Part shown: positions 22,831 through 47,171 of the stretch, piece after piece
Position numbering within the stretch: the stretch's first letter is position 1
Layout of the letters: every line of letters begins with the position of its first letter
Virus record (IMG/VR): IMGVR_UViG_3300020477_000990
Span: 248,001-312,000 of that record
Length of the DNA: 64,000 bases
Strand: one strand, 5' to 3'
Position numbers and translations under genes: made by a program
The notes under the pieces: generated by a model
Told to the model about the DNA's origin: nothing
What the model saw: the letters and a program-made list of their open reading frames with translations, nothing else
Database searches by the model: none

Positions 22831-24213
22831 ATGTTTATGGCAATACTTACATTGCTGACTGCATTAAGCATTTCAGCGGTAGCGATTTACTATTCAATTG
22901 CAGGTTTGGCGGCTATATTTGCCGCGGCGGCAATCCCTATTATGATTATGGGTACTGTTCTTGAGGTTGGTAAGTTAGTAGCGGCCTCTTGGTTGTATCA
23001 AAACTGGAAGGCGGCTCCAGGGGCAATTAAAACATATCTATCAATTGCAGTTGTTGTATTAATGCTAATTACGTCAATGGGTATATTTGGATTTTTATCT
23101 AAAGCACACGTAGAGCAAACGTCATTAGGATCTACACAACAAGTTAAATTAAACAACATAGAAGAAAAAATTATTAGATCAGAAAATAAAATTGAACGTT
23201 GGTCAGATGAAATTGCAAGACTTAATAGTGGGCAAAATGTTCGTGTTGATATTTTAATTGATAAGCAAAATGAAGAACTAGCAGTATTGTATGAAAGAAT
23301 TAAAGAAGAAAAGAACGAATTAAGAGCCCAAGCAGATAAAGATATTGAATTACAAAATAATAGATTATTACAAGCAAAAGAACGTAAAGAATCAGATATT
23401 GCCGCGGCACAAGAAAGATTTAAAGGTTCTTTTAGTAAAAGAAAATTAGATGAAGCTATAGCAGAAGCTAAAGCAAATGAACTTGCAGTTGCTTCGGCGG
23501 CACAAAGAATTATTGTAGAAATACAAAATAAGTTACAAGAAAATCTTGCTAAAATTGATGAAAAATATGCTCCACAAATAGAAAATATTAATGCAACAAT
23601 TAACGGTTTAAGATCAGAAGCAAACGTTAAGACAGATAATATTGATACAAGAATTGATGAGTTAGAAATATTCATTGAAGAAGAACAAGATTCGTTAAAC
23701 CAAGTAAATGAAGATAAAATTATTATTGTAATGGAACAGCAAAAACTTGAAGTAGAAGTTGGTCCATTAAAATATATTGCAGAATTTATATATGGGCAAG
23801 AAGCAGATAGAAATTTATTAGAACAAGCAGTACGTTGGGTTATTATTACAATTATATTTGTATTTGATCCACTAGCAGTATGTTTATTAGTAGCGGCTAA
23901 TATGTCACTTATTAGAAGATTTGGAAGAGGATTTGAAAAACAATATGAGTACGATCCTAATTTAATAAAAGAATATACTGGTAAGAAGCCAACAAGTGTA
24001 ACACCAGAGCAAAAAAAAGACGAAAAAGAATTAGCACAGATAAAAGATAGTAATGCTGAATTAGAAAAAAAATTAAGTGAAGCTGAATCAAAATTAGCTG
24101 AACAATTAGATTATCAAAAATCTTTAGAAGATAAACCAGAAAAGTTGGTCATCAATATTGATGAAACAGCTACAATTGATGCAGAAGATGACACCGAGAA
24201 AAAAAAAGGATAA
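22831..24213 (+). CDS. multi-TM membrane protein with a long coiled coil
   Basis: three to four N-terminal hydrophobic helices, heptad core, TM IIFVFDPLAVCLLVAA. Confidence 0.7.
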   Translation: MFMAILTLLTALSISAVAIYYSIAGLAAIFAAAAIPIMIMGTVLEVGKLVAASWLYQNWKAAPGAIKTYLSIAVVVLMLITSMGIFGFLSKAHVEQTSLGSTQQVKLNNIEEKIIRSENKIERWSDEIARLNSGQNVRVDILIDKQNEELAVLYERIKEEKNELRAQADKDIELQNNRLLQAKERKESDIAAAQERFKGSFSKRKLDEAIAEAKANELAVASAAQRIIVEIQNKLQENLAKIDEKYAPQIENINATINGLRSEANVKTDNIDTRIDELEIFIEEEQDSLNQVNEDKIIIVMEQQKLEVEVGPLKYIAEFIYGQEADRNLLEQAVRWVIITIIFVFDPLAVCLLVAANMSLIRRFGRGFEKQYEYDPNLIKEYTGKKPTSVTPEQKKDEKELAQIKDSNAELEKKLSEAESKLAEQLDYQKSLEDKPEKLVINIDETATIDAEDDTEKKKG

Positions 24214-25258: not shown

Positions 25259-25532
25259 TTGCAAATCAAAAGGTATCATTGTTGATTATAATAATAAAGT
25301 TTACCCTTGTTGCTATGTATTAACTAGAGAAATGTTTCCTGAAGAAAAAAGTAAATATTTAAGTAAGTTAGATAATGATTGGAATGATTTATCAAAGTAT
25401 ACATTAGAAAAAATATTAAGTAATAAAGCATTTACTGAACATTTCAATGAAAAACATTGGAATGATAAAAACAACTGCGATGAGATATGTACGTCTCAAT
25501 GCTCAATAAAGAAAGAAAAAAATAATGCCTAA
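25248..25532 (+). CDS. stand-alone SPASM/twitch domain
   Basis: INC...VYPCC...CDEICTSQC. Confidence 0.75.
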
Positions 25533-26796
25533 GAAAAAAGACGAACAATTTAGTTGTTCATTTTGTGGAAAAAATAGAGAGAAAGTAAAAAAACTTATTG
25601 CAGGACCAAAGGTTTATATTTGTAATGAGTGTATTGAACTTTGTCATTCAATTTTAGAAGAAAGTGATTTACGTCAAGTAGAAGAACGTAAGCAAGAATT
25701 AAAACAAATTATACCAGATGAATTAAAAGCACATTTAGATGAACACGTAATTGGTCAAGAACAAGCTAAAAAAGTTTTAAGTGTAGCAGTATATAACCAT
25801 TATAAAAGATTAGCTAATCCTATAGTAGATGGTGTTGAACTTGAAAAATCAAATGTTTTATTAGTAGGACCAAGTGGCTGTGGTAAAACATTATTAGCAA
25901 AACGTATAGCAGATTATTTAGATGTTCCATTTGCTCAAGCAGATGCAACTACATTAACTGAAAGTGGATATGTTGGCGATGATGTAGAAAATATTATATT
26001 AAGATTATTACAAAATTGTGATTTTGATGTAGCAAAAGCAGAAAAAGGTATTGTTTATATTGATGAAATAGATAAAAAATCACGTAAGTCTGAGTCAACT
26101 TCTATTACTAGAGATGTATCAGGAGAAGGTGTGCAACAAGCATTATTAAAATTGCTTGAAGGTACTATAGTGAGAGTTCCACCAGCTGGTGGAAGAAAAC
26201 ACCCACAGCAAGAAATGATTACTGTTGACACTACAAATATTTTATTTGTTGTAGGTGGAGCATTTGTTGGGTTAGAGGAAATTATTCGTAAAAGACTTAA
26301 TTTGAATACAACAATAGGATTTAATTCTTCATCACCATCAAAAGAAGAAATTGAAAGAGTATTAGAAAGAGCTGAACCAGATGATATAGTTAAATTTGGA
26401 TTAATTCCTGAAATGGTAGGTAGGTTGCCAGTTGTTGTTGCTTGTCATAAACTTGATAAACAACATTTAAATGATATTCTTGTTAAACCTAAAAGTGCCA
26501 TATTAAAGCAATTCCAAAAAATGTTTAAGTTAGATGGAATTGAATTAGAGTTTAGTGATGAAGCAATTGAAGTTGTATGCACTTTAGCATTAAAAAAAGA
26601 TATAGGTGCTAGAGGACTAAGATCTGTTTTAGAAAAGCATTTATTACAATTACAATACGAGTTACCAATGCTTAAAGAACAAGGTGTTGAACGTATTGCA
26701 ATTAATGAAACTTTTATAACAGAAGGAAAGCCACCAATGTTAATATATAAAGAAGTAAATAAAGATAAAGACGGAACGGATAACGGAGCGAAGTGA
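25525..26796 (+). CDS. clpX: ClpX ATPase
   Basis: CSFCG/CNEC zinc domain, [36 protein letters not shown] loop, GARGLR. Confidence 0.97.
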
Positions 26797-27350
26797 AAAA
26801 GCATTTCATTAGAAGAAACAACAAACCAACGGTATTATTAAACTCTGCAATTACCTTTCCAGAAATTAGGTTAATTGATCCAGATGGACAATTTATTGGA
26901 ATAGTTCGAAATCAAGAAGCACATCAAAAAGCCAGAGATGCAGGATTAGATTTAATTTGTATTGCCGATAAGGCAAGTCCTCCTGTTTGCCGTATTATGG
27001 ACTTTGGTAAATGGAATTATGAAAAACAAAAAGCCGATAAGGAAAAGAAAAAGAAAGAACGAGCTAATCGAATTGAATTGCATGAAGTACAATTAAGACC
27101 AGGAACAGATGTTCATGATCTTAAAGTTAAATTAAAAAAAGTACAAGAATTTATAGATGATGGAGATAAAGTAAAAATGGTAATGAAGTTACGAGGTAGA
27201 GAAATTGGGCAAGGAACTATGTTTGTAGATCAATTAAAAGTTATGGTTGCTGGCCAATTAGAATTAGGTAAATTTGATTCTCCACCAAAGCAGTTTGGTA
27301 ATAAAATTATTGCAACAGTTTCTAAACAAAATGAGAAAAAAAATGCTTGA
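26793..27350 (+). CDS. infC: translation initiation factor IF-3
   Basis: [39 protein letters not shown]; GTG start after GGAG. Confidence 0.93.
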
Positions 27351-29299: not shown

Positions 29300-30352
29300 A
29301 TGCCATTAAGTCTTAATAATATAAAAAAGTTTGATATTGAAATTACAAATAAATGTAATGCTAGATGTCCAGGATGTATTCGTACGGTAAATGGAGATAC
29401 ACACCCTTTGCTAAAACAAAATATTACTGAATGGTCAATGGAAGATTTTTCTAATTTAATTCCTAAAGATATTATTAATGGTAAAGAGTTTATATTTGGT
29501 GGCACAGTTGATGATCCTTTTATGAATAAAAATATCATACCAATTACAAAATATATTTTAGATAATGGTGGATCAATTGAAATACATACTAATACAGGAG
29601 CAAATACTGAAAAAACATTTAAAGAAATGGGAAGATTAAGTAAAGAGTCTGGAAGGCTATTAGTAATATTTTCTGTAGATGGATTTGAAAAAACAAATCA
29701 TTTATATAGAGTAAATGTTAATTGGAATAAAGTTGTTGAAAATATGAAGGCATATACAATAGCAGAAGGCAACTGTGAATGGGAATATTTAGTTTTTGAT
29801 CATAATTATGATGATATAGAGAAAGCAAGACGATTTGCAAATGATTTAGGAATAAAATTTATATTAAGACAAAATGTAAGAAACAATCATAGTTGGGTTA
29901 GTAAAAGCAAAGTAAAAGAAAAAGGTGAAATAGTAACTAAAGAGTTTGAAGTAAAAACAACCGATAAATTTAAACACCCTGAAACAGAAGAAGTAGTCAA
30001 ATATAATGATAAATTAAAGGTTTCTAAAGAAGAAGGCCAAAGTATATATTGTAAAATGTATCATGATAAAAGTGTATTTGTTGATTGGAACTATAAAGTA
30101 TGGCCATGTTGTTGGTTTGCAACAGAAAATTTTGAACAGCATGAATATTTTCATATGTTGATTGATCAATTTGGAGAAACTTGGAATAGTTTAAGGTATC
30201 ATACTTGGAATGAAATACTAGGCCATGATTATTATTCTAAATTATTATATCAAAGTTGGAATGGTCAACAATCAGATTATTATAATCCTACTTGTTTTAA
30301 GCAATGTGGTGATAATGCATCTAGACAGAGTTATAAAAAAGAACAATTATAG
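29300..30352 (+). CDS. radical SAM enzyme with C-terminal SPASM/twitch domain (subfamily A)
   Basis: EITNKCNARCPGC, SVDG..TNHLYRVNV, WEYLVFDHN, YC...WPCC, CFKQC. Confidence 0.87.
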   Translation: MPLSLNNIKKFDIEITNKCNARCPGCIRTVNGDTHPLLKQNITEWSMEDFSNLIPKDIINGKEFIFGGTVDDPFMNKNIIPITKYILDNGGSIEIHTNTGANTEKTFKEMGRLSKESGRLLVIFSVDGFEKTNHLYRVNVNWNKVVENMKAYTIAEGNCEWEYLVFDHNYDDIEKARRFANDLGIKFILRQNVRNNHSWVSKSKVKEKGEIVTKEFEVKTTDKFKHPETEEVVKYNDKLKVSKEEGQSIYCKMYHDKSVFVDWNYKVWPCCWFATENFEQHEYFHMLIDQFGETWNSLRYHTWNEILGHDYYSKLLYQSWNGQQSDYYNPTCFKQCGDNASRQSYKKEQL

Positions 30353-30721: not shown

Positions 30722-30775
30722 ATGTGTAGATTGCTATGATAGGATCTACATATTAAAACTTGCTTAAAGGAGGAG
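30722..30775 (+). ncRNA. tandem ROSE-like RNA thermometer hairpins
   Basis: TTGCT..AGGA occurs twice; the second copy pairs with the SD. Confidence 0.5.
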
Positions 30776-30780
30776 TTAAA

Positions 30781-31224
30781 ATGACTAGAAATCTATCTAT
30801 TTTTAATCAGTTACGTCCAGTAACTGTAGGGTTCGATAATATATTTGATCACTTTGAAAGAATGTTTGACGGAGACGTTATGAACATTCCACAGGTTAAT
30901 TATCCACCATATAATATCGTAAAGACAGGTGAAAACACCTACGATATTGAATTAGCATTAGCAGGATTCAGCAAAAATGATATTGATGTTGAATACGAGA
31001 ATAATGTATTAACTGTAAAATCAATCAAAAAAGCAGAAACCGTACAAGAAGGAAACAATGGAATGTTACATCAAGGTATTTCCAAAAGAATGTTTTCTAA
31101 ATCTTTTACTGTTTCAGATGATGTTGAAGTTAAAGGTGCAGAACTTAAAGATGGTTTGCTTAAAGTTTCTTTGGAAAGAATTATTCCAGAATCTAAAAAG
31201 CCAAGAACTATCAAAATTAAGTAA
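30781..31224 (+). CDS. small heat-shock protein Hsp20 (IbpA-like)
   Basis: YPPYNI, IELALAGF, LHQGISKRMF, AELKDGLLKV; AGGAGGAG SD. Confidence 0.95.
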   Translation: MTRNLSIFNQLRPVTVGFDNIFDHFERMFDGDVMNIPQVNYPPYNIVKTGENTYDIELALAGFSKNDIDVEYENNVLTVKSIKKAETVQEGNNGMLHQGISKRMFSKSFTVSDDVEVKGAELKDGLLKVSLERIIPESKKPRTIKIK

Positions 31225-31252: not shown

Positions 31253-33145
31253 ATGAGTAAAATAATTGGTATTGACTTAGGTACAACAAACTCTTGCGTA
31301 TCCATTATGGAAGGTAAGGGAGCCAAAGTTATAGAAAATGCAGAAGGTACTAGAACAACACCATCTGTAGTATCGTTTGGAGATGAACGATTAGTAGGTA
31401 CACCAGCAAAAAGACAGGCTGTTACAAATCCTACTAATACGGTTTTTGCTTCTAAACGTTTAATAGGAAGAAAATTTGATGGAGATTCTGTACAAAAAGA
31501 CATACAGACATCACCATTTAAAATTGTAAAGGCGGAAAATGGAGATGCTTGGGTAGAAGCTAACAACGAAAAATACTCACCATCACAAATTTCGGCTTTC
31601 GTTCTTCAAAAAATGAAAGAAACAGCAGAAAAGTATTTAGGACAAGAAGTAACTAAAGCGGTTATTACTGTTCCTGCGTACTTTAACGATTCACAAAGAC
31701 AAGCAACTAAAGATGCAGGTAAAATTGCAGGACTTGAAGTTGAAAGAATTGTGAATGAACCAACTGCGGCGGCACTTGCCTACGGTTTAGATAAGAAAAA
31801 AACTGGTACGGTTGCTGTATATGACTTAGGTGGAGGTACTTTTGATATTTCTATTTTAGAAATAGGTGACGGAGTATTTGAAGTTAAGTCAACAAATGGT
31901 GATACATCATTGGGTGGTGAAGATTTTGACAATGCATTAGTAGATTATATACTTGCAGAGTTCAAAAAAGACTCAGGTGTAGACTTAAGAAATGATAATC
32001 TTGCACTTCAACGTGTAAGAGAGGCGGCAGAAAAGGCAAAATGTGAATTATCATCTGCAACACAAACAGATATTAGTTTACCATTTATTACTGCTGACAA
32101 ATCTGGACCAAAACATTTAAATCTTAAATTAACAAGAGCTAAATTTGAATCATTGGTTGATGATCTAGTTGATAGAACATTGCAACCATGTAAACAAGCT
32201 CTAAAAGATTCAGGATTTAGTGCTGGAGACATTAGTGAAGTTATTCTTGTAGGTGGTATGACAAGAATGCCTAAAGTTCAAAAAGCAGTTCAAGACTTTT
32301 TTGGTAAAGAACCAAATAAAAGTGTAAATCCAGATGAAGTAGTAGCAATTGGAGCCGCAATTCAAGGTGGTGTATTACAAGGTGATGTTAAAGATGTGTT
32401 ACTTTTAGATGTAACACCATTATCACTTGGTATTGAAACACTTGGAGGTGTATGCACGAAGCTAATTGAAAAGAATACAACTATTCCTACAAAGAAAAGT
32501 CAAGTATTCTCAACTGCTGATGATGGTCAAACGGCAGTTACTATTAGAGTAATGCAAGGTGAACGTGAAATGGCCGCTGATAATAAGTTACTAGGTAACT
32601 TTGACTTGGTAGGTATTGCATCTGCACCAAGAGGTGTACCTCAAATTGAAGTAACATTTGATATTGATGCTAATGGTATCGTAAATGTTAGTGCAAAAGA
32701 CAAAGGTACTGGCAAAGAACAAAAGATACAAATACAAGCATCAGGTGGATTAAGTGAAACTGAAATCGATAAGATGGTAAAAGACGCTGAAGCCAATAAA
32801 GAAGCAGATAAAAAGAAAAGAGAAGAAGTAGATGTTAAGAATCAAGCAGATACAATGATTCATTCTACTGAAAAAACTCTTAAAGAACATGGCGATAAGT
32901 TATCAACAGAAGATAAAAAGAAAGTTGAAGACGACTTGACTGCATTAAAAGATGTAATATCTTCTGGAAATAGCGAAACAATTAAGGATAAAATTAAATC
33001 TTTAACTGAATCAGCTATGAAGTTAGGTGAAGCTGTATATAAAGATCAGCAACAACAAACATCTAATAATAATGAAAATGCTTCTAACGATGCAAAAAAC
33101 AACGATAATGTTGTTGATGCAGACTTTGAAGAAGTTAAGAAATAA
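31253..33145 (+). CDS. dnaK: Hsp70 chaperone DnaK
   Basis: [39 protein letters not shown]-type linker region, C-terminal DADFEEV. Confidence 0.98.
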
Positions 33146-33157
33146 TTAGCTATACAA

Positions 33158-33187
33158 AATCCCCGGTAATTTTTTTTGCTGGGGATT
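33158..33187 (+). terminator. GC-rich hairpin after dnaK
   Basis: AATCCCC/GGGGATT inverted repeat. Confidence 0.5.
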
Positions 33188-33252
33188 CTCTTGAATAACG
33201 ATAAATACTTTAGAATATAAGAATTAGTTTCCGAAAAGGGCTTTTAAGTAAA

Positions 33253-33816
33253 ATGGATTTTTTAAAAATAAAAAAACACGGGATATTTTTGAAATGGTGG
33301 TGGTTTTTCTGCTTATTATTTGCGGCAACCGTACTATTAATTAATTTTGAAGTACATGAATTACTATGGGATCAAGATAGAACCAAATTATCATTCTTTA
33401 TTTTATCTATTTTCTATGCAATGACAGTACATTGTGGATATGAAAGTTGGAAATTAAGTAAATTAGCAAATGGAGATATAAAAAATCTTCCAAATTTAGA
33501 TACAAGGCACGAACCAGGTTGGTTTGCATCTGACATTTTATTAACATTAGGTCTAATTGGAACAGTATCAGGATTTATTTTAATGTTAGCTGGGGCTTTT
33601 AGTGGAATTAATATTTCTGATGTATCATCAGTACAAACTGCATTAGCAAGAATGGCAGTAGGAATGTCAACAGCATTATATACAACGTTGACAGGTTTGA
33701 TAACTAGTACAATTTTAAAATTTCAATATTTTAGATTAGATCAAGACTTAGAGAGGTATAGACAGAGACAGGCATCAAGCCTAATAGAACAGGTTGTTGA
33801 AAACCAAAAGGAATAG
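33253..33816 (+). CDS. MotA/TolQ/ExbB-family proton-channel subunit
   Basis: four TM segments; LGLIGTVSGF and GMSTALYTTLTGL motifs; GATAAATA at 33200. Confidence 0.8.
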   Translation: MDFLKIKKHGIFLKWWWFFCLLFAATVLLINFEVHELLWDQDRTKLSFFILSIFYAMTVHCGYESWKLSKLANGDIKNLPNLDTRHEPGWFASDILLTLGLIGTVSGFILMLAGAFSGINISDVSSVQTALARMAVGMSTALYTTLTGLITSTILKFQYFRLDQDLERYRQRQASSLIEQVVENQKE

Positions 33817-33819
33817 TCA

Positions 33820-34527
33820 ATGTCAAATTTACGTCGCCATCGTAGTTACGGATCACAAGTTGCTTTTATAGATTTATTATTCAACACTCTTGTTGGATTT
33901 GTATTTTTATTTGTAATGGCGTTCATATTAATTAATCCAGTTGCTAAAAAATCTAATGTTGAATTAAATGCAGAATTTATTATTACAATGAAATGGCCGA
34001 AAAAAGCAGAAGATGATGTAGACCTTTGGGTAAGAGATCCTTTAGGAAATACAGCTGGATTTAAATCTAAAGATGTTGGACTTATGAGTTTAGATAGAGA
34101 TGATTTAGGTGGTGCCAATGATACAGTTATTGGTGCAGATGGTAAAGCAATTAAAGTATATAATAATGAAGAGCATATGACAATTAGAGGAATTATACCA
34201 GGAGAGTATATTGTTAACGTTCACTTGTATGCCAAAAAAGCAGAAAAACAAGTTAAAAGTAAAAGTAAATACTATCCTAGTATACCGGTAACTGTTACAG
34301 TAGAAAAATTAAATCCATACGGAATTGTAACAGTTAGAGAAATTATATTAACGAAAAAAGGACAAGAAATTACGGCAGTTAGATTTACAGTAGATGATCA
34401 AGGTAAGATTACGAACATAAATCAATTGCCATATCAAATGATTATTAATCCATATTCTGGCACAGATGATGGAATTGGAAGTAGTCATGGAGCCGCGGCA
34501 AACACAGAATATTTTGGAGCACCATAA
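33820..34527 (+). CDS. ExbD/TolR/MotB-like single-TM subunit with a YfaP/DUF2135-like periplasmic domain
   Basis: AFIDLLFNTLVGFVFLF (Asp in the TM), W...DDVDLWVRDP.G, PGEYIVNVHLY. Confidence 0.65.
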   Translation: MSNLRRHRSYGSQVAFIDLLFNTLVGFVFLFVMAFILINPVAKKSNVELNAEFIITMKWPKKAEDDVDLWVRDPLGNTAGFKSKDVGLMSLDRDDLGGANDTVIGADGKAIKVYNNEEHMTIRGIIPGEYIVNVHLYAKKAEKQVKSKSKYYPSIPVTVTVEKLNPYGIVTVREIILTKKGQEITAVRFTVDDQGKITNINQLPYQMIINPYSGTDDGIGSSHGAAANTEYFGAP

Positions 34528-34529
34528 TT

Positions 34530-35096
34530 ATGATACAAGGGCATATATTTTTAGTACTACTTTTAATGATCATAGGAGCAACAGTTCTATGGACATTTAT
34601 ATCTTCATCTGGAAGTAAATGGAGTATAAAAGCAGTAATGACATTATTGGTTATATTAGCAATTTTAAGTTCTTGGGTTGGATTAAAAACAATGTATGGA
34701 TATCCATACGATTCATATCCAAATCATGGAAAGTATTTTTTAATAGGCCAACACGTTAAAGAGCCAAATATTAAAACTGGTGATCCTGGAGCAATTTATG
34801 TATGGTTAATTATTAGAGAGGCCAATGAAGAAAATTTAACTTGGGTAGATAAGTTAAGTGATCTATTTAATGGTAGACAACCGCGTGTTTATGCTATACA
34901 ATATAATAGACAAATGCATGAAGAATTACAAAAGATTGATGAGGAAAGAAGAGGGCAACCTTTTCCGATAACTATTGCATCTGAAGAAGCAAAAGAAAGA
35001 GGCGAAGCACATCAAGGTAATGATCGTGAAGAAAGGCAAAAATTTGTACCGTATGTTTTACCAGATACGGTTCTAATTGAAAAAAATGTAAATTAA
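34530..35096 (+). CDS. two-TM membrane protein, third gene of the motor module
   Basis: two N-terminal hydrophobic helices, soluble C-terminus. Confidence 0.6.
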   Translation: MIQGHIFLVLLLMIIGATVLWTFISSSGSKWSIKAVMTLLVILAILSSWVGLKTMYGYPYDSYPNHGKYFLIGQHVKEPNIKTGDPGAIYVWLIIREANEENLTWVDKLSDLFNGRQPRVYAIQYNRQMHEELQKIDEERRGQPFPITIASEEAKERGEAHQGNDREERQKFVPYVLPDTVLIEKNVN

Positions 35097-35107: not shown

Positions 35108-35431
35108 ATGACAGAATCAGGTAACGCAAACGCATCAGCAAATATACAAACAACAACTAGTGTTCAAACAGATTTAAATGAACCTAGCAAGTATAATGTT
35201 ATTTTATTAAATGATGATTATACGCCTATGGACTTTGTTACTGATATTTTAACTACAATCTTTAGAAAAACAAAAGAACAGGCTGAAGCAGTTATGTTAA
35301 AAATTCATGAGAATGGTAAAGGCGTTGCCGGCAGTTATGTATTTGAAATAGCAGAACAAAAAGCAATTGAAACTACAGCAAAAGCGAGGTCGCAAGGACA
35401 TCCGCTTAATTGTACAGTTGAAAAAGAATAA
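35108..35431 (+). CDS. clpS: N-degron adaptor ClpS
   Basis: YNVILLNDDYTPMDFV, MLKIHENGKGVAG, IAEQK, PLNCTVE. Confidence 0.95.
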   Translation: MTESGNANASANIQTTTSVQTDLNEPSKYNVILLNDDYTPMDFVTDILTTIFRKTKEQAEAVMLKIHENGKGVAGSYVFEIAEQKAIETTAKARSQGHPLNCTVEKE

Positions 35432-35446
35432 TAATAAGGAATAAAA

Positions 35447-36442
35447 ATGTTTAGATTTTTTACCACCAGAAAATGGTTACTATGGGCCTGGCTAGGTTCA
35501 GCAATTATTTTAGGATCACTTTGGGTTCAAGTAAAAATTGATGTTAAAATAAATGAATGGTTTGGTGTGTTTTATGATATGATTCAAAAAGCACTTGCAA
35601 CACCAAATGCAATTACACTACAAGAATATTTTGCAAGTTTATTATCATTTATAACACTTGCAGGTATGTATGTTGGATTATATGTTTTAATAAGTTATTT
35701 TACAGCTCACTTTTTATTTAGGTGGCGTACTGCTATGGTTGAATGGTACCATAGTGTTTATGATAAAGCACGTTCTATAGAAGGTGCATCACAAAGGGTT
35801 CAAGAAGATACAATTAAGTTTTCACGTATTATGGAAGGACTTGGTACAAGTTTAATTGAATCAGTTATGATTTTAATTCAATTTATTCCTATACTATTTG
35901 GGTTATCACTTGGTATTCCAATATTCTTTTTTGGTGATTGGCAATATGGTTTAATTACTGGTGCATTGATTTGGACATTAGGTGGTACTGTATTTTTAAT
36001 TGGGCTAGGTTGGATATTGAGACTAGTTGGTGTTGAATATGATTTACAAAAACAAGAAGCGGCTTATAGAAAAATTCTTGTAATTGCTGAAGATGATGGA
36101 AATGTAAGACCGAAAAAAATTGAAGAATTCTTTGATGATGTTCGTAAAATACATTTTAAAAGTTATCTGCGTTATCTATATTTTAATATTGGACGTATGG
36201 CGTACTTACAAGCGAATGTATTATCAGCTTATGTATTTTTAGCACCAGCCATTGTAGCAGGTGTTGTTACACTTGGTGTAATGCAACAAATTATAAGGGC
36301 ATTTGGAAGAGTTGAAGGTTCAATGCAGTATCTTTTAAAAGCATGGCCAACAATCATTGAGTTAGCAAGTGTTTATAAACGTTTAAGAGAATTTGAAGCT
36401 AAATTACCTAAAGAAAAAGATGATACACAACGAGTACATTAA
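35447..36442 (+). CDS. sbmA: SbmA/BacA-family peptide transporter
   Basis: INEWFG.FYD.IQKAL, FRWRTAM, EGASQRVQEDT, TLGVMQQIIRAFGRVEGS, WPTIIELASVYKRL. Confidence 0.9.
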   Translation: MFRFFTTRKWLLWAWLGSAIILGSLWVQVKIDVKINEWFGVFYDMIQKALATPNAITLQEYFASLLSFITLAGMYVGLYVLISYFTAHFLFRWRTAMVEWYHSVYDKARSIEGASQRVQEDTIKFSRIMEGLGTSLIESVMILIQFIPILFGLSLGIPIFFFGDWQYGLITGALIWTLGGTVFLIGLGWILRLVGVEYDLQKQEAAYRKILVIAEDDGNVRPKKIEEFFDDVRKIHFKSYLRYLYFNIGRMAYLQANVLSAYVFLAPAIVAGVVTLGVMQQIIRAFGRVEGSMQYLLKAWPTIIELASVYKRLREFEAKLPKEKDDTQRVH

Positions 36443-36971
36443 AGAAATTAGTACAAGTATTGATGATAGTTATAGATTAAAGTTAGTTAACTATGCTACC
36501 GAATTAGTATATCATGAAGGTATATCGTCGACATATACGGCAATACATTTTAGTCAAGAATTAGATATTAATAATGAATTATTAAAACCAATAGTTGAAG
36601 ATTTTAAAAAAGCAGTTCCTGATGCATATAACTTAAATATTAGGTTTTTTAAATTTCCACCTTTTGGGTCACAGTTCCCTCATTCAGATTTTAGTATTGC
36701 TACATCAGAAAATGGAAGATCATTTTTAGTACCACTATATCCTGATCCATCTTCAGATTTATATGCTCCATTATTATTTTGGGGTGATGATATTAAAAAA
36801 GTACCATATGATTGGTATAATGAAAGTAAAGCAAAATATGTAGTTCCTAAAATTAAAAATGGATATATAGTTAATATTCATAAAATTCATAGTGTAATGA
36901 ATCATATACCACTACATAGATATAATTTACAAATAAGATTTAATACTAACAATAAGGATATTTTAATATAA
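36420..36971 (+). CDS. 2OG-Fe(II) oxygenase-like protein
   Basis: ATG at 36420; PHSD (HxD)...IHSV...RYNLQIR. Confidence 0.6.
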   Translation: MIHNEYIKEISTSIDDSYRLKLVNYATELVYHEGISSTYTAIHFSQELDINNELLKPIVEDFKKAVPDAYNLNIRFFKFPPFGSQFPHSDFSIATSENGRSFLVPLYPDPSSDLYAPLLFWGDDIKKVPYDWYNESKAKYVVPKIKNGYIVNIHKIHSVMNHIPLHRYNLQIRFNTNNKDILI

Positions 36972-37300
36972 TGGAAAATGAAATAGATAAACCAAAATTA
37001 ACAATATATGCTAAAATTGTTGAAAACTTAAAACAGGTTTATGATCCTGAAATTTCAGTCAATATATATGATTTAGGATTAATATATAATATTGATTTAG
37101 AAAGTTTGCCAAAAGCGACAATAACACATACTCTTACAAGTGCATTTTGTCCAGCGGCAGACCAAATTGTGGCCGATATAAAAGGTGCGGCTGAAACTGT
37201 AGAAGGAGTAGATGCAGTTGAAGTCATTACAACATTTGATCCACCTTTTGGTCCAGATAAAATGTCAGAAGAGGTAAAATTAGCTCTTGGCATTTTCTAA
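36971..37300 (+). CDS. DUF59/SufT/PaaD-like Fe-S assembly protein
   Basis: LKQVYDPEISVNIYDLGLIY, LTSAFCP, FDPP. Confidence 0.9.
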   Translation: MENEIDKPKLTIYAKIVENLKQVYDPEISVNIYDLGLIYNIDLESLPKATITHTLTSAFCPAADQIVADIKGAAETVEGVDAVEVITTFDPPFGPDKMSEEVKLALGIF

Positions 37301-37335: not shown

Positions 37336-37554
37336 ATGGATATTTCAAAAGGTTTATATAAAGCATTAGAAATAAAATATATGGCTGAAATTGAAGATGC
37401 AAAAGTGCGTTTAGTAATATATTTTGAAAAATCAGTTGCTATTGGAGAACATCCACAGCATACTGAAGAAATGGATAAGTTATTATCACAAATATCTGGT
37501 GCTGAAGATAATTTAGAATCGTTAAAAAAATATTTCAATACTTATGACAATTAA
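37336..37554 (+). CDS. conserved T4-like phage hypothetical protein
   Basis: AIGEHP motif; AAGGA SD. Confidence 0.65.
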   Translation: MDISKGLYKALEIKYMAEIEDAKVRLVIYFEKSVAIGEHPQHTEEMDKLLSQISGAEDNLESLKKYFNTYDN

Positions 37555-39034
37555 AGAATTATTAGACGAAATAGGTGTAGATCAAAATTTATATACAGTA
37601 CCAAATGGAGTACCTGTAATATCTCCAATTGATGCTAAAGAAATAGCTAAAGTAAAGCATACAACTCGACAAGAGTACGAAGCAAAATTATTAAATGTTA
37701 AACAAGCACAAATTGATTGGCGAACAGTACCAGCACCACAACGTGGTGAATTAATAAGATTATTTGGCGAAGAGCTTCGCAAATATAAAAACGAACTTGG
37801 TAGATTAGTTACTATTGAAAATGGTAAAATATTTCAAGAAGGTTTAGGTGAAGTTCAAGAAATGATAGACATCTGCGATTTTGCAGTTGGGTTATCAAGA
37901 CAATTATACGGGTTGACAATGCCAAGTGAAAGACCAGGTCACCGTATGCAAGAGATGTGGAATCCTTTAGGGGTGGTAGGAGTTGTTACAGCATTTAACT
38001 TTCCTGTAGCAGTATGGAGTTGGAACTTTGCACTTGCAACAGTATGTGGTAATGCAACACTTTGGAAACCATCACCTAAAACACCTCTAGTATCTTTTGC
38101 CTGTGAAGCAATATTTAAAAAAGCAGTTGAACGTTCAGGAATACCCCAAGCAAAAAGTATTTTAGAACTTGTAATTGGGGCTAATGAATCATCTGAATGG
38201 ATTGCTAATGATAAACTTATTAATTTAGTTTCATTAACAGGATCAACAGCAATGGGACAAGCATTAGGTAAAAATGTTACAGAAAGATTTGGTAGAGTAT
38301 TAATGGAACTTGGTGGTAATAATGCAATGATAGTTACACCAAATGCAGATATGAAATTAGCAATAAGAGCCATATTGTTTAGTGCTGTAGGTACAGCAGG
38401 ACAAAGATGTACAACTTTACGTAGAGTTATTGCACATAGATCAATTTATGAACAATTAGCAAAATACTTAAAAAAATATTATGCAAAAATTACAATTGGT
38501 AATCCATTAGATGAAGGTGTACTAGTTGGTCCTTTAGTAAGTGAACAAGCATATGATAGTATGAAAGCTACAATAGATGAGTGTGAAAAATTAGGCGAAG
38601 TAACAGGTGGAACAAGATTAGATATGCCTGGAGTATATGTAAAACCAGCAATAGTAGAATTACAAAAAGCAGAAGAAATTACAAAAACAGAAACGTTTGC
38701 ACCTTTATTATATATTATACCATATGATGAATTAGCAGAAGCAATAGCAATTAATAATAATGTACCACAAGGTTTAAGTAGTTGTATCTTTACAAAAGAT
38801 TTACAAGAAGCTGAATTGTTTATTGGAGCAAATGGATCTGATTGTGGTCTTGTAAATGTTAATATTGGCCCTAGTGGGGCTGAAATTGGCGGCGCCTTTG
38901 GTGGAGAAAAACATACAGGTGGCGGAAGAGAAAGTGGTTCAGATGCATGGAAACAATATATGCGTAGAAGCACGGTAACGGTAAACTACTCAACAGACTT
39001 GCCATTGGCACAAGGAGTTGAATTTAATGTCTAA
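37544..39034 (+). CDS. aldehyde dehydrogenase, ALDH7 (aminoadipate-semialdehyde / piperideine-6-carboxylate) type
   Basis: [52 protein letters not shown]. Confidence 0.9.
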
Positions 39035-42786: not shown

Positions 42787-44256
42787 ATGAGCAATAATAA
42801 ACTACCATCAAAAACGTTTTGTGCGTTACCGTGGATGCATTTATCAACTAGACCAGATGGAAATATGCGAGTATGTTGTACAGCTAACGCAAGTTCAGTA
42901 GGTGCAACTAATGATAAAAAGCATGGTGGACAAGTTGGTATTCTAAAAAAAGATAATGGTGTTCCTGCAAACTTAAATAATTCAGATTTAATGTCATCGT
43001 GGAATAATGATTATATGAAGAACGTTCGTTTACAAATGTTAAACGGAGAAAAACCACCAGCTTGTTTAAAATGTTTTAAAGAAGAAGATGCAGGTCATAA
43101 TTCAAAACGTATGTGGGAAACTGAATATTGGATGAATAGATATTCTTTAGAAGATATGATTGGTGAAACAAAAGAAGACGGTTCTATTCCACCTAAAATT
43201 AGATATATTGATTTGCGTATGGGATCTAAATGTAATTTAAAATGTATTATGTGTAGTCCACATGATTCTTCATTATGGGTCAAAGATTGGTTAGACGTAT
43301 ATCCTACAATTAAAAATCCACAGCTAAAGCAAACAATGGGTTGGGATAATAAAGGTAAAGTACATGGCGCTGGTTATAACTGGCATAAAAATAACGAAGT
43401 ATTTTGGAAGCAGTTATATGAGCAAATACCTCATATGTATCAATTATATTTTGCAGGCGGTGAGTCTACAATTATAGAAGAACATTATACATTATTAGAA
43501 GAAGTTATTAGAAGAGGATATGCTCCTAAAATAGAATTACGTTATAATTCAAATGGTGTTGAAATGCCAGATAGATTATTTGAATTATGGAGTCATTTTA
43601 AAAGAGTGCGTTTTCATTATAGTGTAGATTCAATTGAAGAAATGAATCGTTATATACGTTTTCCTGCAGATTGGGATAATACAGTTAAACAATTTCATTT
43701 GTTAGATAATACAGAAGATAAAGTAGAAGTAACAATTGCCTGTGCAGTACAGGCTTTGAATATACATTATATTCCAGATTTTATTAAATGGAAATGGAAA
43801 CAAAATTTTAAAAAAATAAATGTATGGCCATTTGGAGCAGGTATGTTAAATTATCACTTTGTATATTGGCCTGGGCAATTAAATGTAAAAGCATTGCCAC
43901 AATGGATGAAAAATAAAACAAAAGAAAAATATGAAGCATTTTATCCTTGGTTATTAGAAAATTGGAAACTATCCGGTGCACCAAGTAAAGAAGCATTTAT
44001 GGAAGCAAGTTACGGTATTAAAAGATTAAAAGGAATGATTCAATTTATGATGTCAGAAGATTGGTCAAGACGTATGCCAGAATTTAGAGAATATATTACA
44101 AAATTTGATAAGCAACGTGGCACAGATTTTGCTAAAACTTTTCCGGATATGGCTGATATGTTAGATGAGTCATTAGATTATAGTGTTAAACCAATAACCG
44201 GTGAAAGTATTGATGAAAAAACAGAGAAGGAATTAGAAGATGGCGGAACAATCTGA
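42787..44256 (+). CDS. radical SAM enzyme with N-terminal SPASM/twitch domain (subfamily B)
   Basis: FCALPW...RVCC, CLKC, CNLKCIMC, FAGGE, YNSN. Confidence 0.88.
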   Translation: MSNNKLPSKTFCALPWMHLSTRPDGNMRVCCTANASSVGATNDKKHGGQVGILKKDNGVPANLNNSDLMSSWNNDYMKNVRLQMLNGEKPPACLKCFKEEDAGHNSKRMWETEYWMNRYSLEDMIGETKEDGSIPPKIRYIDLRMGSKCNLKCIMCSPHDSSLWVKDWLDVYPTIKNPQLKQTMGWDNKGKVHGAGYNWHKNNEVFWKQLYEQIPHMYQLYFAGGESTIIEEHYTLLEEVIRRGYAPKIELRYNSNGVEMPDRLFELWSHFKRVRFHYSVDSIEEMNRYIRFPADWDNTVKQFHLLDNTEDKVEVTIACAVQALNIHYIPDFIKWKWKQNFKKINVWPFGAGMLNYHFVYWPGQLNVKALPQWMKNKTKEKYEAFYPWLLENWKLSGAPSKEAFMEASYGIKRLKGMIQFMMSEDWSRRMPEFREYITKFDKQRGTDFAKTFPDMADMLDESLDYSVKPITGESIDEKTEKELEDGGTI

Positions 44257-44806: not shown

Positions 44807-45888
44807 TGGTTAATAATTACAATAAATTTTTTAGTGATACGTCTCTAGTAAAGTGCTATTCAGAATTTCAACGATTAGAAGAAGTAATTGTTGGTAGTGC
44901 ATATAAACCAGATTGCTTTGATAGTAGTGAGCAATTTAGCCAAGAAGCCAAAGACTTATTAAAAAGAGTGTTTACAGAAACAGCAGAAGATTTAGAAGTA
45001 CTTGTTAGTATATTAAAAGCTGAAGGCATAATAGTACAACGTCCTAAAGTAATGCAAGATCCACTTGCAAAATATAATATGGGAGAATTTGATATTGAAT
45101 ATGCAAACCAACCTTTGCAACCAAGAGATATATTAGGATTTTATGGTAATAAAATTATTGAAGCATACACAAAAGACAGAACAAGATATTTTGAAAATTG
45201 GTGTTCAAGAGATATATTAAAGCAATATTATTTGCGTGGTGCAGAGTGGATAGCAATGCCACCACCACAATTAAATAAAAAAACATACCAAGATTATTAT
45301 CAAAATAGTGAAGTACTTTTTCATAATGCTAACTTAATTAAATGTGGTAAAGATATATTCCATTCACAATCACATCAAAAAGATCCTGTAAAAGGTAAAG
45401 GTACAGAACAAGGTTTAGAATGGTATAAAAAGCAATTGCCAGAATTTACATTTAATGAAATACCTGTTGGAGGTCATGCTGATGGTAAAATTGCATTAAT
45501 TAAACCAGGTTTATTAGTAACTTGGAAAAAAGAATGGATACCAGAAAAGTTAAAATCATGGGATTGTATTATAACAGAATCAGGAACAAAGTTTCCAGAA
45601 GATTTTAAAAAAACACGTAAAGAACATTTTTATAAAGATTATATTGAAAAATGGTTATCGCATTGGATTGGTTATGTTGATGAAACAGTATTTGATGTTA
45701 ATATGTTGAGTATATCAGAAGATAAAGTTATTTGTACAGGAACAGATAAAGAAGTATTTGCAAAATTAGAACAACACGGAGTAACACCTATATATTGGAA
45801 ATTTAGACATCAATATTTTTGGGATGGCGGAGTACATTGTTTAACAGCAGATGTAAGACGTAAAGGAGAACAGGAAAATTATTTCTAA
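44806..45888 (+). CDS. amidinotransferase (pentein fold; Gly/inosamine-phosphate amidinotransferase-like)
   Basis: LEEVIVG, QPRD, GHADG, DVNML, GGVHCLT catalytic Cys. Confidence 0.85.
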   Translation: MVNNYNKFFSDTSLVKCYSEFQRLEEVIVGSAYKPDCFDSSEQFSQEAKDLLKRVFTETAEDLEVLVSILKAEGIIVQRPKVMQDPLAKYNMGEFDIEYANQPLQPRDILGFYGNKIIEAYTKDRTRYFENWCSRDILKQYYLRGAEWIAMPPPQLNKKTYQDYYQNSEVLFHNANLIKCGKDIFHSQSHQKDPVKGKGTEQGLEWYKKQLPEFTFNEIPVGGHADGKIALIKPGLLVTWKKEWIPEKLKSWDCIITESGTKFPEDFKKTRKEHFYKDYIEKWLSHWIGYVDETVFDVNMLSISEDKVICTGTDKEVFAKLEQHGVTPIYWKFRHQYFWDGGVHCLTADVRRKGEQENYF

Positions 45889-47171
45889 TGGACAATCAAG
45901 CATGGAAGAAACGTGATTGGGATTGGCACAAAACAATCACTAAAAAATGTGTAGCACCTTGGCATAGTTTAACTATCGAATGGGATGGTGAAGTATATGC
46001 TGATGCTGTGGCGTTTAAACCATATGGAAGTATATATGAAAATACTTTAACTGAATTATGGAATTCTCCAAAAGCAGTTAATCTTCGTAAATCATGGAGC
46101 AAAGGATTGCCAGATAATATAATATGTGCTAGTTGTATAAAGAAAGAAGAAACAGTAGGTAGTTCTAGACGACAATACTTTTATAGAAATTTGCCATCTG
46201 AATTATTAAAAACAGCAACATATGATCCAGAGCAAAAACCTAATATATGGTATTTAGAAATTAACTCATCAAATAAATGTAATTTAAAATGTAGAATGTG
46301 TAATGGGCAAGTTTCAAGTACTTGGATTAAAGAAGAAACACAATTAGCAAAAATATCTCCTAGTTGGATGCCAAAAAGAAAAAATGGAAAATACTCTAGA
46401 GTTGATTTTGATGTTATTAAAAATGTTTTAGAAAAAAGAGAATATTTTAAAGATTTGCAATTTTTAAAGTTAACAGGCGGTGAGCCATTAATGGAAGAAC
46501 AAAATTATCAATTAATGGAACAATTTATTGAATGGGATATTGCAAAAAATGTTATGCTTGATATTAACACTAACGGAACATTTATGAATGAAAGATTAAT
46601 AAACATTGCTAAACATTTTAAATTAGTTAAGTTACATATAAGTTTAGAAGGAACAGGAGAGTTATATCAATATATACGTGGTGGAGAAAACTTTACTTTA
46701 GATCAATTAGAAACAAATATAATTGAATTCAACAAGTTACCAAATACAGTAATAATTTATACTGTTACAGTACAAATATATAATATTTTTAATTTATCAG
46801 ATATATGGAATTGGTATTTAAAAATAAGAAAACCAACTAATGAAATTTATTTTAAAAATGTTGTAGTTAATCCTCCACATTTAAATTTTCAAATATTACC
46901 TAATAGTTTAAAGTTAGAAGCATATGAAATAATGAAACAAGCAGATTTACCACAAGGTGAGTATTGGGAATTAGATGATTTTAGTCAAGGTGATATAGGA
47001 TTTAGCAATATTATGAAGAATTTACAGAATCTAAATACATATAACGAGCAACGTTTAAAAGAGTTTGTCCAGTTTACACGTGATATTGATACTATAAGAA
47101 AAACGGATATTAAAAAAATTGTCCCGCAATTAGCAGGATTATTTGAGGAAGTATATGAAGCAAGAGCCTAA
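45888..47171 (+). CDS. radical SAM enzyme, subfamily B
   Basis: CVAPW, CASC, CNLKCRMC, TGGEPL, INTNGT, SLEG...YIRG. Confidence 0.87.
   Translation: MDNQAWKKRDWDWHKTITKKCVAPWHSLTIEWDGEVYADAVAFKPYGSIYENTLTELWNSPKAVNLRKSWSKGLPDNIICASCIKKEETVGSSRRQYFYRNLPSELLKTATYDPEQKPNIWYLEINSSNKCNLKCRMCNGQVSSTWIKEETQLAKISPSWMPKRKNGKYSRVDFDVIKNVLEKREYFKDLQFLKLTGGEPLMEEQNYQLMEQFIEWDIAKNVMLDINTNGTFMNERLINIAKHFKLVKLHISLEGTGELYQYIRGGENFTLDQLETNIIEFNKLPNTVIIYTVTVQIYNIFNLSDIWNWYLKIRKPTNEIYFKNVVVNPPHLNFQILPNSLKLEAYEIMKQADLPQGEYWELDDFSQGDIGFSNIMKNLQNLNTYNEQRLKEFVQFTRDIDTIRKTDIKKIVPQLAGLFEEVYEARA

What the first reader, a model, noticed from the sequence alone, without database searches (positions are those of the whole stretch)
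33200..35096. Phage-encoded ion-driven membrane motor (MotA/ExbB + ExbD-like + third subunit)
Seen: a late-promoter operon with a 4-TM MotA/TolQ/ExbB-like protein, a single-TM partner carrying Asp in its TM (FIDLLF) and a YfaP/DUF2135-like periplasmic domain rather than an OmpA-like one, and a 2-TM protein. Established: 5:2 motors (MotAB, ExbBD, TolQR, ZorAB) use this Asp for ion flux. Inference: an uncharacterised motor used for envelope remodelling, superinfection exclusion, nutrient import or controlled depolarisation.
Basis: partly seen in the sequence, partly recalled or inferred. Interest (0 to 1): 0.7.

Follow-up and report, generated by a model that had tools for sequence, protein, structure and literature searches.

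The report
Phage-borne three-gene MotA/ExbB-type membrane motor
A 328-kb marine T4-like phage carries a tightly packed three-gene set (a minimal MotA/ExbB-type channel protein, a one-helix partner with the motor family's key aspartate and a calcium-binding-type head, and a new two-helix protein); the same trio turns up in hundreds of phages and about one in seven sampled Alphaproteobacteria, and nobody appears to have studied it.

Summary
Genes A (33253-33816), B (33820-34527) and C (34530-35096) are real, separated by 2-3 nt, in a complete 328,149-bp T4-like phage genome.

- **A** passes Pfam MotA_ExbB (34 bits, cut-off 22.9) and keeps the pore-helix motifs.
- **B** has one N-in helix. Its Asp18 is conserved in 417 of 419 relatives. 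It carries a TerD/DUF2135-like beta-sandwich, not an OmpA-like or ExbD-like domain.
- **C** is a new family: a two-helix hairpin, a small periplasmic domain, a disordered linker and a conserved C-terminal tail.

The trio is a self-contained module. All three genes are present in 147 of 152 loci, and in 26 of 26 further cellular loci found by an independent search. These include rhizobiophages, IMG/VR contigs and ordinary chromosomal sites in Alphaproteobacteria (B found in 55 of 401 genomes sampled). No other neighbour is conserved.

The best reading is an ion-driven 5:2-type inner-membrane motor whose output is periplasmic, Ton/Tol-like, with C as the transducer arm. This is inferred, not shown. 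The 5:2 assembly could not be tested, and a 1:1:1 complex job gave no verdict. The biological role is unknown. The "late promoter" is only a one-mismatch match. It is a new variant of a known kind.

The parts
33253..33816 (+). Gene A: minimal MotA/TolQ/ExbB-family membrane protein (187 aa), probably 4 TM with almost no cytoplasmic domain
   Evidence: Pfam PF01618 at 34.1 bits against a cut-off of 22.9. It is the only MotA_ExbB gene in the phage genome. Profile alignment to TolQ (8odt) and MotA (6ykm) covers the two pore helices. Across 267 unique relatives, G100 and G103 are invariant, T104 is kept in 261/267, T145 in 265/265 and D42 in 256/258.
33820..34527 (+). Gene B: N-in single-TM protein with the conserved TM Asp (D18), a conserved INPxAKK segment after the helix, a TerD/DUF2135-like beta-sandwich (52-201) and a disordered tail
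   Evidence: AF2 model with pLDDT 80. D18 is D in 417/419. W59, D66, D68 and E118 are invariant, and D94, D95, D101, N116, R123 and H135 are kept in 95% or more. Foldseek finds DUF2135 proteins in AFDB. VIA finds TerD at Z 10.1 and 8.9. hhalign places D18 on the TM Asp of ExbD/TolR (P 0.001) and of MotB (P 0.017), which is weak.
34530..35096 (+). Gene C: new family with a TM hairpin, a G-x-P motif, a small alpha/beta periplasmic domain, a disordered linker and a conserved C-terminal Y/F-x-L-P...K tail
   Evidence: AF2 model with pLDDT 79. There is no PDB fold match beyond the helical hairpin, and AFDB matches are only uncharacterised proteins. An iterated HMM finds it next to B in 151 of 152 loci. 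G57, P59, W92, G142 and K185 are conserved.
33146..33252 (+). Intergenic region between dnaK and A: weak hairpin (33161-33186) and a one-mismatch T4-late-promoter-like GATAAATA (33200-33207)
   Evidence: Sequence read directly. No exact TATAAATA lies here. The scan finds no sigma-70-like site on the + strand here.

Best explanation
A, B and C together encode a stand-alone, ion-driven inner-membrane motor of the MotAB/ExbBD/TolQR (5:2) superfamily, with an unprecedented periplasmic side.

**Proposed mechanism**
1. *Inferred by homology:* A forms the pentameric ring. Its last two helices (GLIGTVSG and STALYTTLTG) line the ion path.
2. *Inferred:* The B helix sits inside the ring. Its Asp18 is cyclically protonated, or binds Na+, which drives rotation or stepping of A around B.
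3. *Shown:* A has almost no cytoplasmic domain, so any work must be delivered in the periplasm.
4. *Shown for the fold; binding is inferred:* B carries, on a very short linker, a TerD/DUF2135-type beta-sandwich with an invariant acidic cluster. This is probably a Ca2+- or ligand-binding head.
5. *Shown for co-occurrence; topology and role are inferred:* C always accompanies A and B. By the positive-inside rule its folded domain, flexible linker and conserved C-terminal tail lie in the periplasm. It is proposed to act as the TonB/TolA-like arm that couples the motor to a target in the wall or outer membrane.

**Evolution and role**
The module is exchanged between Alphaproteobacteria and their phages. 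In the phage it is probably an auxiliary host-type function that keeps some proton-motive-force-dependent envelope process running, or re-directs it, during infection. What that process is remains unknown.
For: - **A is a family member.** It passes the Pfam cut-off and keeps the pore-helix motifs across 267 relatives.
- **The B Asp is conserved.** It is D in 99.5% of 419 relatives. It lies near the cytoplasmic end of an N-in helix, and hhalign places it on the Asp of ExbD/TolR and of MotB. Single family members give weak MotB_plug (E 0.011) and ExbD (E 0.065) Pfam hits.
- **The trio is a module.** All three genes are present in 147 of 152 loci. Four of the five exceptions are cut by contig ends, and the fifth is phage 16-3, whose A is too divergent for the profile. 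Genes mostly overlap by 1-8 nt.
- **Independent confirmation.** 26 of 26 cellular loci found by whole-genome profile search also hold A, B and C.
- **No other neighbour is shared** across lineages.
- **Chromosomal housekeeping contexts.** Neighbours are TctAB and anthranilate synthase in a complete SAR116-type chromosome, SufB and aspartate dehydrogenase, and trehalose genes.
- **It is an extra system.** Carrier genomes also hold canonical MotA/ExbB/TolQ paralogues.
- **Spread among phages.** It is found in 29 Rhizobium and Sinorhizobium phage records spanning several genome-size classes, from the 60-kb phage 16-3 to 171-kb phages, and in T4-like phages of up to 527 kb.
- **Possible transcription.** Near-identical fragments of A, B and C occur in four marine RNA libraries. 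This is weak evidence.
Against: - No assembly or stoichiometry was tested. The only complex job (1:1:1) gave no verdict.
- B is not a detectable member of the ExbD/TolR or MotB families. There is no Pfam hit for the window protein, and hhalign probability is at most 21%.
- C has no TonB/TolA features (two helices, no TonB_C domain), so its 'arm' role is analogy only.
- No outer-membrane or wall partner gene is conserved nearby.
- The topology of A (4 TM) and of C rests on hydropathy and charge bias only.
- Transcription timing is unknown, and DNA carry-over in the RNA libraries cannot be excluded.
Confidence: 0.55

Rival explanations
1. Gated ion leak or sensor rather than a force-transducing motor. 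The TerD/DUF2135-like head of B senses periplasmic Ca2+, a metal or another ligand. It opens or closes the A/B ion path so as to tune membrane potential, either for stress signalling in cells or for controlled depolarisation and lysis timing in phages. C would be a regulator.
For: The best solved-structure matches of B's head are Ca2+-binding TerD proteins (Z 10.1 and 8.9). The head has an invariant acidic cluster (D66, D68, D94, D95, D101, E118). The linker between helix and head is very short, and a conserved INPxAKK segment sits where MotB has its plug. A lacks any cytoplasmic output domain.
Against: No known member of the MotA/ExbB superfamily works only as a regulated leak. The obligate third subunit with a long flexible linker and a conserved terminal motif looks like a tether or arm rather than a gate. 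Metal binding was not tested.
Confidence: 0.2
2. Defence or superinfection-exclusion device, a Zorya-like motor that detects envelope perturbation by an incoming phage. Phages would carry it to exclude competitors, and bacteria would carry it as immunity.
For: A gives weak PADLOC ZorA hits (best E 8e-6, 22.8 bits). The module moves horizontally between phages and cells, with at least 3-4 switches forced on the B tree. It is present in the temperate phage 16-3.
Against: The ZorA hits cover only the shared MotA_ExbB core. The long ZorA tail, the peptidoglycan-binding ZorB domain and effector genes (ZorC/D/E) are all absent, and B and C have no meaningful PADLOC hit (B only a chance-level HORMA match, E 0.046; C none). 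In the SAR116 group the trio lies at one fixed site with the same housekeeping neighbours in about 37-39 genomes. Other lineages place it beside SufB or trehalose genes rather than in defence islands.
Confidence: 0.12
3. A plain extra ExbBD/TolQR paralogue that energises the host's existing TonB-dependent transporters or Tol-Pal. C would be a divergent TonB/TolA.
For: Three-gene logic (channel, Asp helix, third membrane protein with a flexible periplasmic stretch) mirrors exbB-exbD-tonB and tolQ-tolR-tolA. Some C proteins end in Pro-rich stretches.
Against: NCBIfam TolQ, ExbB, MotP and PomA models score 12-20 bits against cut-offs of 200-400. The head of B is a beta-sandwich, not the ExbD/TolR fold. 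C has two helices and no TonB_C domain. Carrier genomes already have canonical paralogues.
Confidence: 0.08

Closest known systems
ExbB-ExbD-TonB and TolQ-TolR-TolA (Ton and Tol 5:2 motors)
   Same: A MotA/ExbB-family channel protein. An adjacent N-in single-helix partner with an essential-type Asp near the cytoplasmic end. A third co-encoded membrane protein with a flexible periplasmic part. Output expected in the periplasm.
   Different: A is much smaller (187 aa), probably has 4 TM, and has almost no cytoplasmic domain. The head of B is a TerD/DUF2135-like beta-sandwich on a short linker, not the ExbD/TolR alpha/beta domain. C has a two-helix hairpin, no SHLS-type helix and no TonB_C or TolA domain III. 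All equivalog models score far below their cut-offs.
MotA-MotB / PomA-PomB flagellar stator
   Same: Likely 4-TM topology of A. The motif A-F-x-D-L around B's Asp resembles MotB's T-F-A-D-(L/M). A conserved short segment follows the helix at the position where MotB has its plug.
   Different: No torque-generating cytoplasmic domain in A. No OmpA-like peptidoglycan-binding domain in B. No flagellar context. An obligate third subunit is present.
ZorA-ZorB (Zorya anti-phage defence)
   Same: A non-flagellar MotA/ExbB-type pair linked to phage biology, with weak PADLOC ZorA hits for A.
   Different: No long ZorA tail, no ZorB peptidoglycan-binding domain, no effector genes, and core-genome rather than island context.
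TerD family and DUF2135/YfaP-type (PPC-like) beta-sandwich domains
   Same: The fold of B residues 52-201 (VIA Z 10.1 to TerD 2qz7, Foldseek E 1.6e-9 to DUF2135 proteins). The sequence motif W...DD-x-D-L-W/Y-V-x-D-P-x-G resembles the Ca2+-binding jelly-roll of the Tk-SP protease.
   Different: Those domains are soluble or attached to secreted enzymes and vWA/TPR proteins. Here the domain is fused to an Asp-bearing motor helix. The Pfam models are not matched by the window protein.

Membership tests
MotA/TolQ/ExbB (Pfam PF01618) | Score above the curated gathering cut-off | tested here: met
   A scores 34.1 bits against 22.9, E 2.6e-8, over residues 98-169. Relatives in cells and rhizobiophages also match, e.g. 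32.8 and 26.2 bits.
MotA/TolQ/ExbB (Pfam PF01618) | Conserved pore-helix motifs with Thr (G-x-x-G-T-V-x-G and A-L-x-T-T-x-x-G) | tested here: met
   These align to TolQ 8odt and MotA 6ykm. T104 is kept in 261/267, T145 in 265/265, and G100 and G103 are invariant.
5:2 motor (MotAB, ExbBD, TolQR, ZorAB, GldLM) | Pentamer of A around a dimer of B helices | not testable with these tools
The 1:1:1 job gave no verdict.
5:2 motor (MotAB, ExbBD, TolQR, ZorAB, GldLM) | Conserved acidic residue in the single TM helix of the B subunit, with N-in topology | tested here: met
   D18 is D in 417 of 419 relatives. The N-terminus has 3 Arg and no acidic residue. The AF2 helix spans 12-38.
ExbD/TolR (Pfam PF02472) | Sequence match and the ExbD-type alpha/beta periplasmic domain | tested here: not met
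   The window protein gives no hit at E <= 1, and 1 of 28 relatives hits at E 0.065. hhalign matches the TM only, probability 21%. The periplasmic fold is a beta-sandwich.
MotB/PomB | OmpA-like peptidoglycan-binding domain; plug helix | tested here: not met
   There is no OmpA hit and the fold is TerD-like. MotB_plug is hit in 1 of 28 relatives at E 0.011 only.
DUF2135 (Pfam PF09906) | Match to the family model | tested here: inconclusive
   The window protein gives no hit. 3 of 28 relatives hit, best E 6e-4. Structure matches DUF2135 proteins in AFDB at E 1.6e-9. An Atlas cluster with DUF2135 appears at score 0.82, which is a lead only.
TerD | TerD beta-sandwich fold with Ca2+ sites | tested here: inconclusive
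   Fold similarity is Z 10.1 (2qz7) and 8.9 (2kxt), well above the next rows, and Foldseek gives E 2e-4. There is no sequence match, and metal binding was not tested.
Zorya (ZorAB plus effectors) | Long ZorA C-terminal tail, ZorB peptidoglycan-binding domain, ZorC/D/E genes nearby | tested here: not met
   A is 187 aa. PADLOC hits cover only the channel core, at 22.8 bits or less, against ZorA models of 420-780 positions. No conserved neighbours exist.
TonB/TolA (for C) | Single N-terminal TM and a TonB_C or TolA C-terminal domain | tested here: not met
   C has two helices, no Pfam hit above noise and no PDB fold match.

The most novel reading that the evidence does not exclude
The A-B-C trio is a further functional class of 5:2 ion-driven motor, beside the flagellar, Ton/Tol, gliding and Zorya classes. 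It would be the smallest known, with no cytoplasmic face, a Ca2+-binding TerD/DUF2135-type rotor head and a new two-helix transducer. It is traded between Alphaproteobacteria and their phages. Large marine T4-like phages and rhizobiophages would use it to power a still unknown envelope process during infection.
Probability: 0.4. Interest if true: 0.8.

Novelty: new variant of a known kind. Interest (0 to 1): 0.66.

Why it matters
Ion-driven 5:2 motors are known to power flagella, outer-membrane import, envelope maintenance, gliding and one anti-phage system. This is a compact, self-contained version with two partner proteins of new architecture.

It is abundant. The B family has about 1,800 clusters at 50% identity, mostly from marine viral sequence. 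It is also present in about 14% of sampled Alphaproteobacteria, including SAR116- and SAR11-related groups.

If it is a working motor, three things follow:
- It gives a minimal system for studying how ion flow is turned into movement.
- It points to an unknown energy-requiring step in the envelope of abundant ocean bacteria.
- It shows that phages carry their own membrane motors.

The module also occurs in culturable rhizobiophages, including the classic temperate phage 16-3 (genes p038-p042). The question is therefore testable in ordinary laboratory strains.

Tried and rejected
- **Complex prediction.** A:B:C at 1:1:1 with my own alignments scored 0.01 against a mark of 0.32, giving no verdict. 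This is not evidence either way. A true 5:2 job needs 7 chains, and the tool takes at most 6.
- **DNA similarity.** A blastn search of the phage collection found nothing.
- **tblastn of A** against the phage collection found nothing, although weak MotA_ExbB genes do sit upstream of B there.
- **PHROGs** gave no family for A or B, and only noise for C.
- **NCBIfam** gave only far-sub-threshold TolQ, ZorA, ExbB, MotP and PomA hits.
- **Fold of C.** PDB Foldseek and the VIA wide search matched only the generic helical hairpin.
- **Profile search of B against PDB sequences** gave only weak motif matches to a Tk-SP jelly-roll and to a virion protein.
- **hhalign of B's N-terminus** against ExbD/TolR and MotB from carrier genomes gave the right register but low probability. 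I treat this as inconclusive.
- **Guilt by association.** No conserved neighbour exists beyond A, B and C in 152 plus 20 loci.
- **Names of cellular homologues.** All are 'hypothetical protein', mostly from uncultured genomes.
- **Literature.** Searches on DUF2135, MotA_ExbB with phage, phage-encoded ExbB/ExbD/TolQ, rhizobiophage with MotA/ExbB, TerD with motor names, and a 2025 survey of MotAB relatives found no description of this trio.
- **Metatranscriptome contigs.** These show presence only, at low depth. The heavy dnaK signal there comes from other organisms.
- **Prophage origin of all cellular copies: rejected.** Several sit among housekeeping genes. Two 'cellular' bins (Chloroflexota, Legionellales) do look like mis-binned phage contigs.

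Full report
**What is in the sequence**

The window is part of a complete 328,149-bp virus record with direct terminal repeats and a T4-type gp23 capsid gene. It has 31% G+C, nearly all genes lie on the + strand, and it carries six tRNAs.

At the reported place there are three ORFs:
- A, 33253-33816, 187 aa
- B, 33820-34527, 235 aa
- C, 34530-35096, 188 aa

They are 3 and 2 nt apart, and each has its own Shine-Dalgarno-like sequence. Upstream lie hsp20 and dnaK. Downstream, with gaps of 11 and 15 nt, lie clpS and an sbmA/bacA-type transporter gene.

The 107-nt gap before A holds a weak hairpin and GATAAATA, one mismatch from the T4 late-promoter motif. The exact motif occurs eight times in the window, seven of them on the + strand, but not here. 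The 'late-promoter operon' is therefore not shown, and the transcription unit is probably longer than three genes.

**Gene A**

A passes the Pfam MotA_ExbB cut-off (34.1 against 22.9 bits) and is the only such gene in the phage.

Equivalog models for TolQ, ExbB, MotP, PomA and ZorA score only 12-20 bits, and PADLOC ZorA models at most 22.8 bits. A is therefore a separate branch of the superfamily.

A profile of A and its relatives aligns over the two pore helices of TolQ and MotA. Among 267 unique relatives, G100 and G103 are invariant, T104 is kept in 261/267 and T145 in 265/265.

Hydropathy and charge bias fit four helices with both ends in the cytoplasm, and a loop of only about 30 residues where MotA has its torque domain. 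This topology is an inference.

**Gene B**

The AF2 model (pLDDT 80) has one helix (12-38), a short linker, a beta-sandwich (52-201) and a disordered tail.

The Asp of FIDLLF (D18) is invariant in three alignments and is D in 417 of 419 unique relatives. The N-terminus is Arg-rich, which fits N-in topology.

hhalign puts D18 on the TM Asp of ExbD/TolR and of MotB taken from carrier genomes, but with low probability. The window protein has no Pfam hit.

The head matches as follows:
- DUF2135 proteins in AFDB, E 1.6e-9, including one of the same length and architecture.
- TerD structures in the PDB, Z 10.1 and 8.9, well above the background.
- DUF2135 as the most recurrent weak Pfam hit among relatives.

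An acidic cluster is invariant or nearly so: D66, D68, D94, D95, D101 and E118, together with N116, R123 and H135. Its motif resembles a Ca2+-binding protease jelly-roll. Metal binding is a hypothesis.

**Gene C**

The AF2 model (pLDDT 79) shows a helical hairpin, a small alpha/beta domain (59-150) and a disordered C-terminal third.

No solved fold matches beyond the hairpin, and AFDB matches are uncharacterised proteins only.

The alignment shows G-x-P after helix 2, a low-complexity linker of variable length, and a conserved terminal Y/F-x-L-P...K motif. The positively charged loop between the helices suggests that the C-terminal part is periplasmic. This is an inference.

**The trio is a module**

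B has 3,601 relatives in 90% clusters and 1,774 representatives at 50% identity. All are about 200-230 aa and unnamed.

tblastn finds B in 29 Rhizobium and Sinorhizobium phage records spanning several genome-size classes, from the 60-kb phage 16-3 to 171-kb phages. In each of the three records examined in detail, a weak MotA_ExbB gene lies upstream and a gene of about 150 aa lies downstream.

Pattern scans gave 69 loci in cellular genome bins and 80 in IMG/VR.

Iterated profiles find A, B and C together in 147 of 152 loci. Four exceptions are cut by contig ends, and the fifth is phage 16-3, whose A is very divergent. The genes usually overlap by 1-8 nt, and nothing else is conserved around them.

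An independent whole-genome profile search found B in 55 of 401 evenly sampled Alphaproteobacteria and in 14 of 401 Pseudomonadota. All 26 loci fetched from those hits again hold A, B and C, once with C duplicated.

Chromosomal contexts are housekeeping and differ between lineages. Carrier genomes also have canonical MotA/ExbB/TolQ genes.

On a B tree, viral and cellular rows are interleaved. The window protein lies in a purely viral clade of 15 representative rows (14 IMG/VR rows plus the window). Four of five large carrier records have T4-type capsid genes, up to 527 kb. Atlas clusters of B and C are mostly viral.

**How it most likely works**

By homology, A and B should form an ion-conducting ring-and-axle unit in which D18 carries the ion. 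A has no cytoplasmic domain, so the output must be periplasmic: the sandwich head of B and the tethered arm of C. This resembles Ton/Tol in logic but not in parts.

I put 0.55 on this reading. The rivals are:
- a ligand-gated leak or sensor, 0.2
- a defence or exclusion device, 0.12
- a plain Ton/Tol paralogue, 0.08

The biological process it serves is not known.

**Limits**

The 5:2 assembly could not be tested, and the one complex job gave no verdict. Near-identical fragments of A, B and C occur at low depth in four marine RNA libraries, which is weak evidence of transcription. Literature searches found no description of this trio.

**Verdict**

The module is a new variant within a known superfamily, and it is testable in culturable rhizobiophages.

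Noticed in passing
window 18007-20076 and 26793-27350: The phage encodes a full-length elongation factor G (all five EF-G domains) and an initiation factor IF-3 (both domains). Translation factors are unusual cargo for a phage.
   Followed up: partly
window 25525-26796, 30760-31224, 31253-33145, 35108-35431: There is a proteostasis set: ClpX (with zinc finger), Hsp20, a 630-aa DnaK and ClpS. In other viral contigs the trio sits next to ClpP instead (L020-type neighbours).
   Followed up: partly
window 35447-36442: An SbmA/BacA-family peptide importer gene (Pfam E 1.5e-135) lies two genes downstream of C. Homologues of it and of clpS accompany the trio in 9-12 related IMG/VR contigs.
   Followed up: partly
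window 29300-30352, 42787-44256, 45888-47171, 36971-37300, 37544-39034: Several radical-SAM/SPASM-type ORFs, an FeS_assembly_P protein and an aldehyde dehydrogenase form a block of cellular-type metabolic genes.
   Followed up: no
window, whole (e.g. 5188, 17976, 20494, 22818, 30713): TATAAATA is under-represented (8 found, about 18.5 expected). Seven of the eight copies are on the coding strand, and those checked lie shortly before ORF starts, as expected for T4-type late promoters.
   Followed up: partly
L171 7556-8011 and 8047-8532: In one alphaproteobacterial genome, gene C is duplicated in tandem between B and the usual C position. L172 has an extra 152-aa ORF in the same place.
   Followed up: no
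L020 and L026: Genome bins labelled Chloroflexota and Legionellales carry the trio beside ClpP and a family-B DNA polymerase shared with IMG/VR contigs, and they cluster with viral rows on the tree. They are probably phage contigs binned by mistake.
   Followed up: partly
L029, L032-L034, L036-L037, L040-L049 and others (contig starts): Many SAR116 single-cell assemblies have a contig end about 50-160 nt (mostly about 75-90 nt) upstream of gene A. This points to a recurrent assembly break or variable region just before the trio.
   Followed up: no
L001 5567-6259 and L003 1289-2188: Two unrelated rhizobiophages (RHph_N3_13 and 16-3) each have a trypsin-like, DegP-type peptidase gene within about 2 kb of the trio.
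   Followed up: no
window 48763-51357, 52399-54225, 22831-24213: Three large ORFs (864, 608 and 460 aa) have no Pfam or PHROG match.
   Followed up: no
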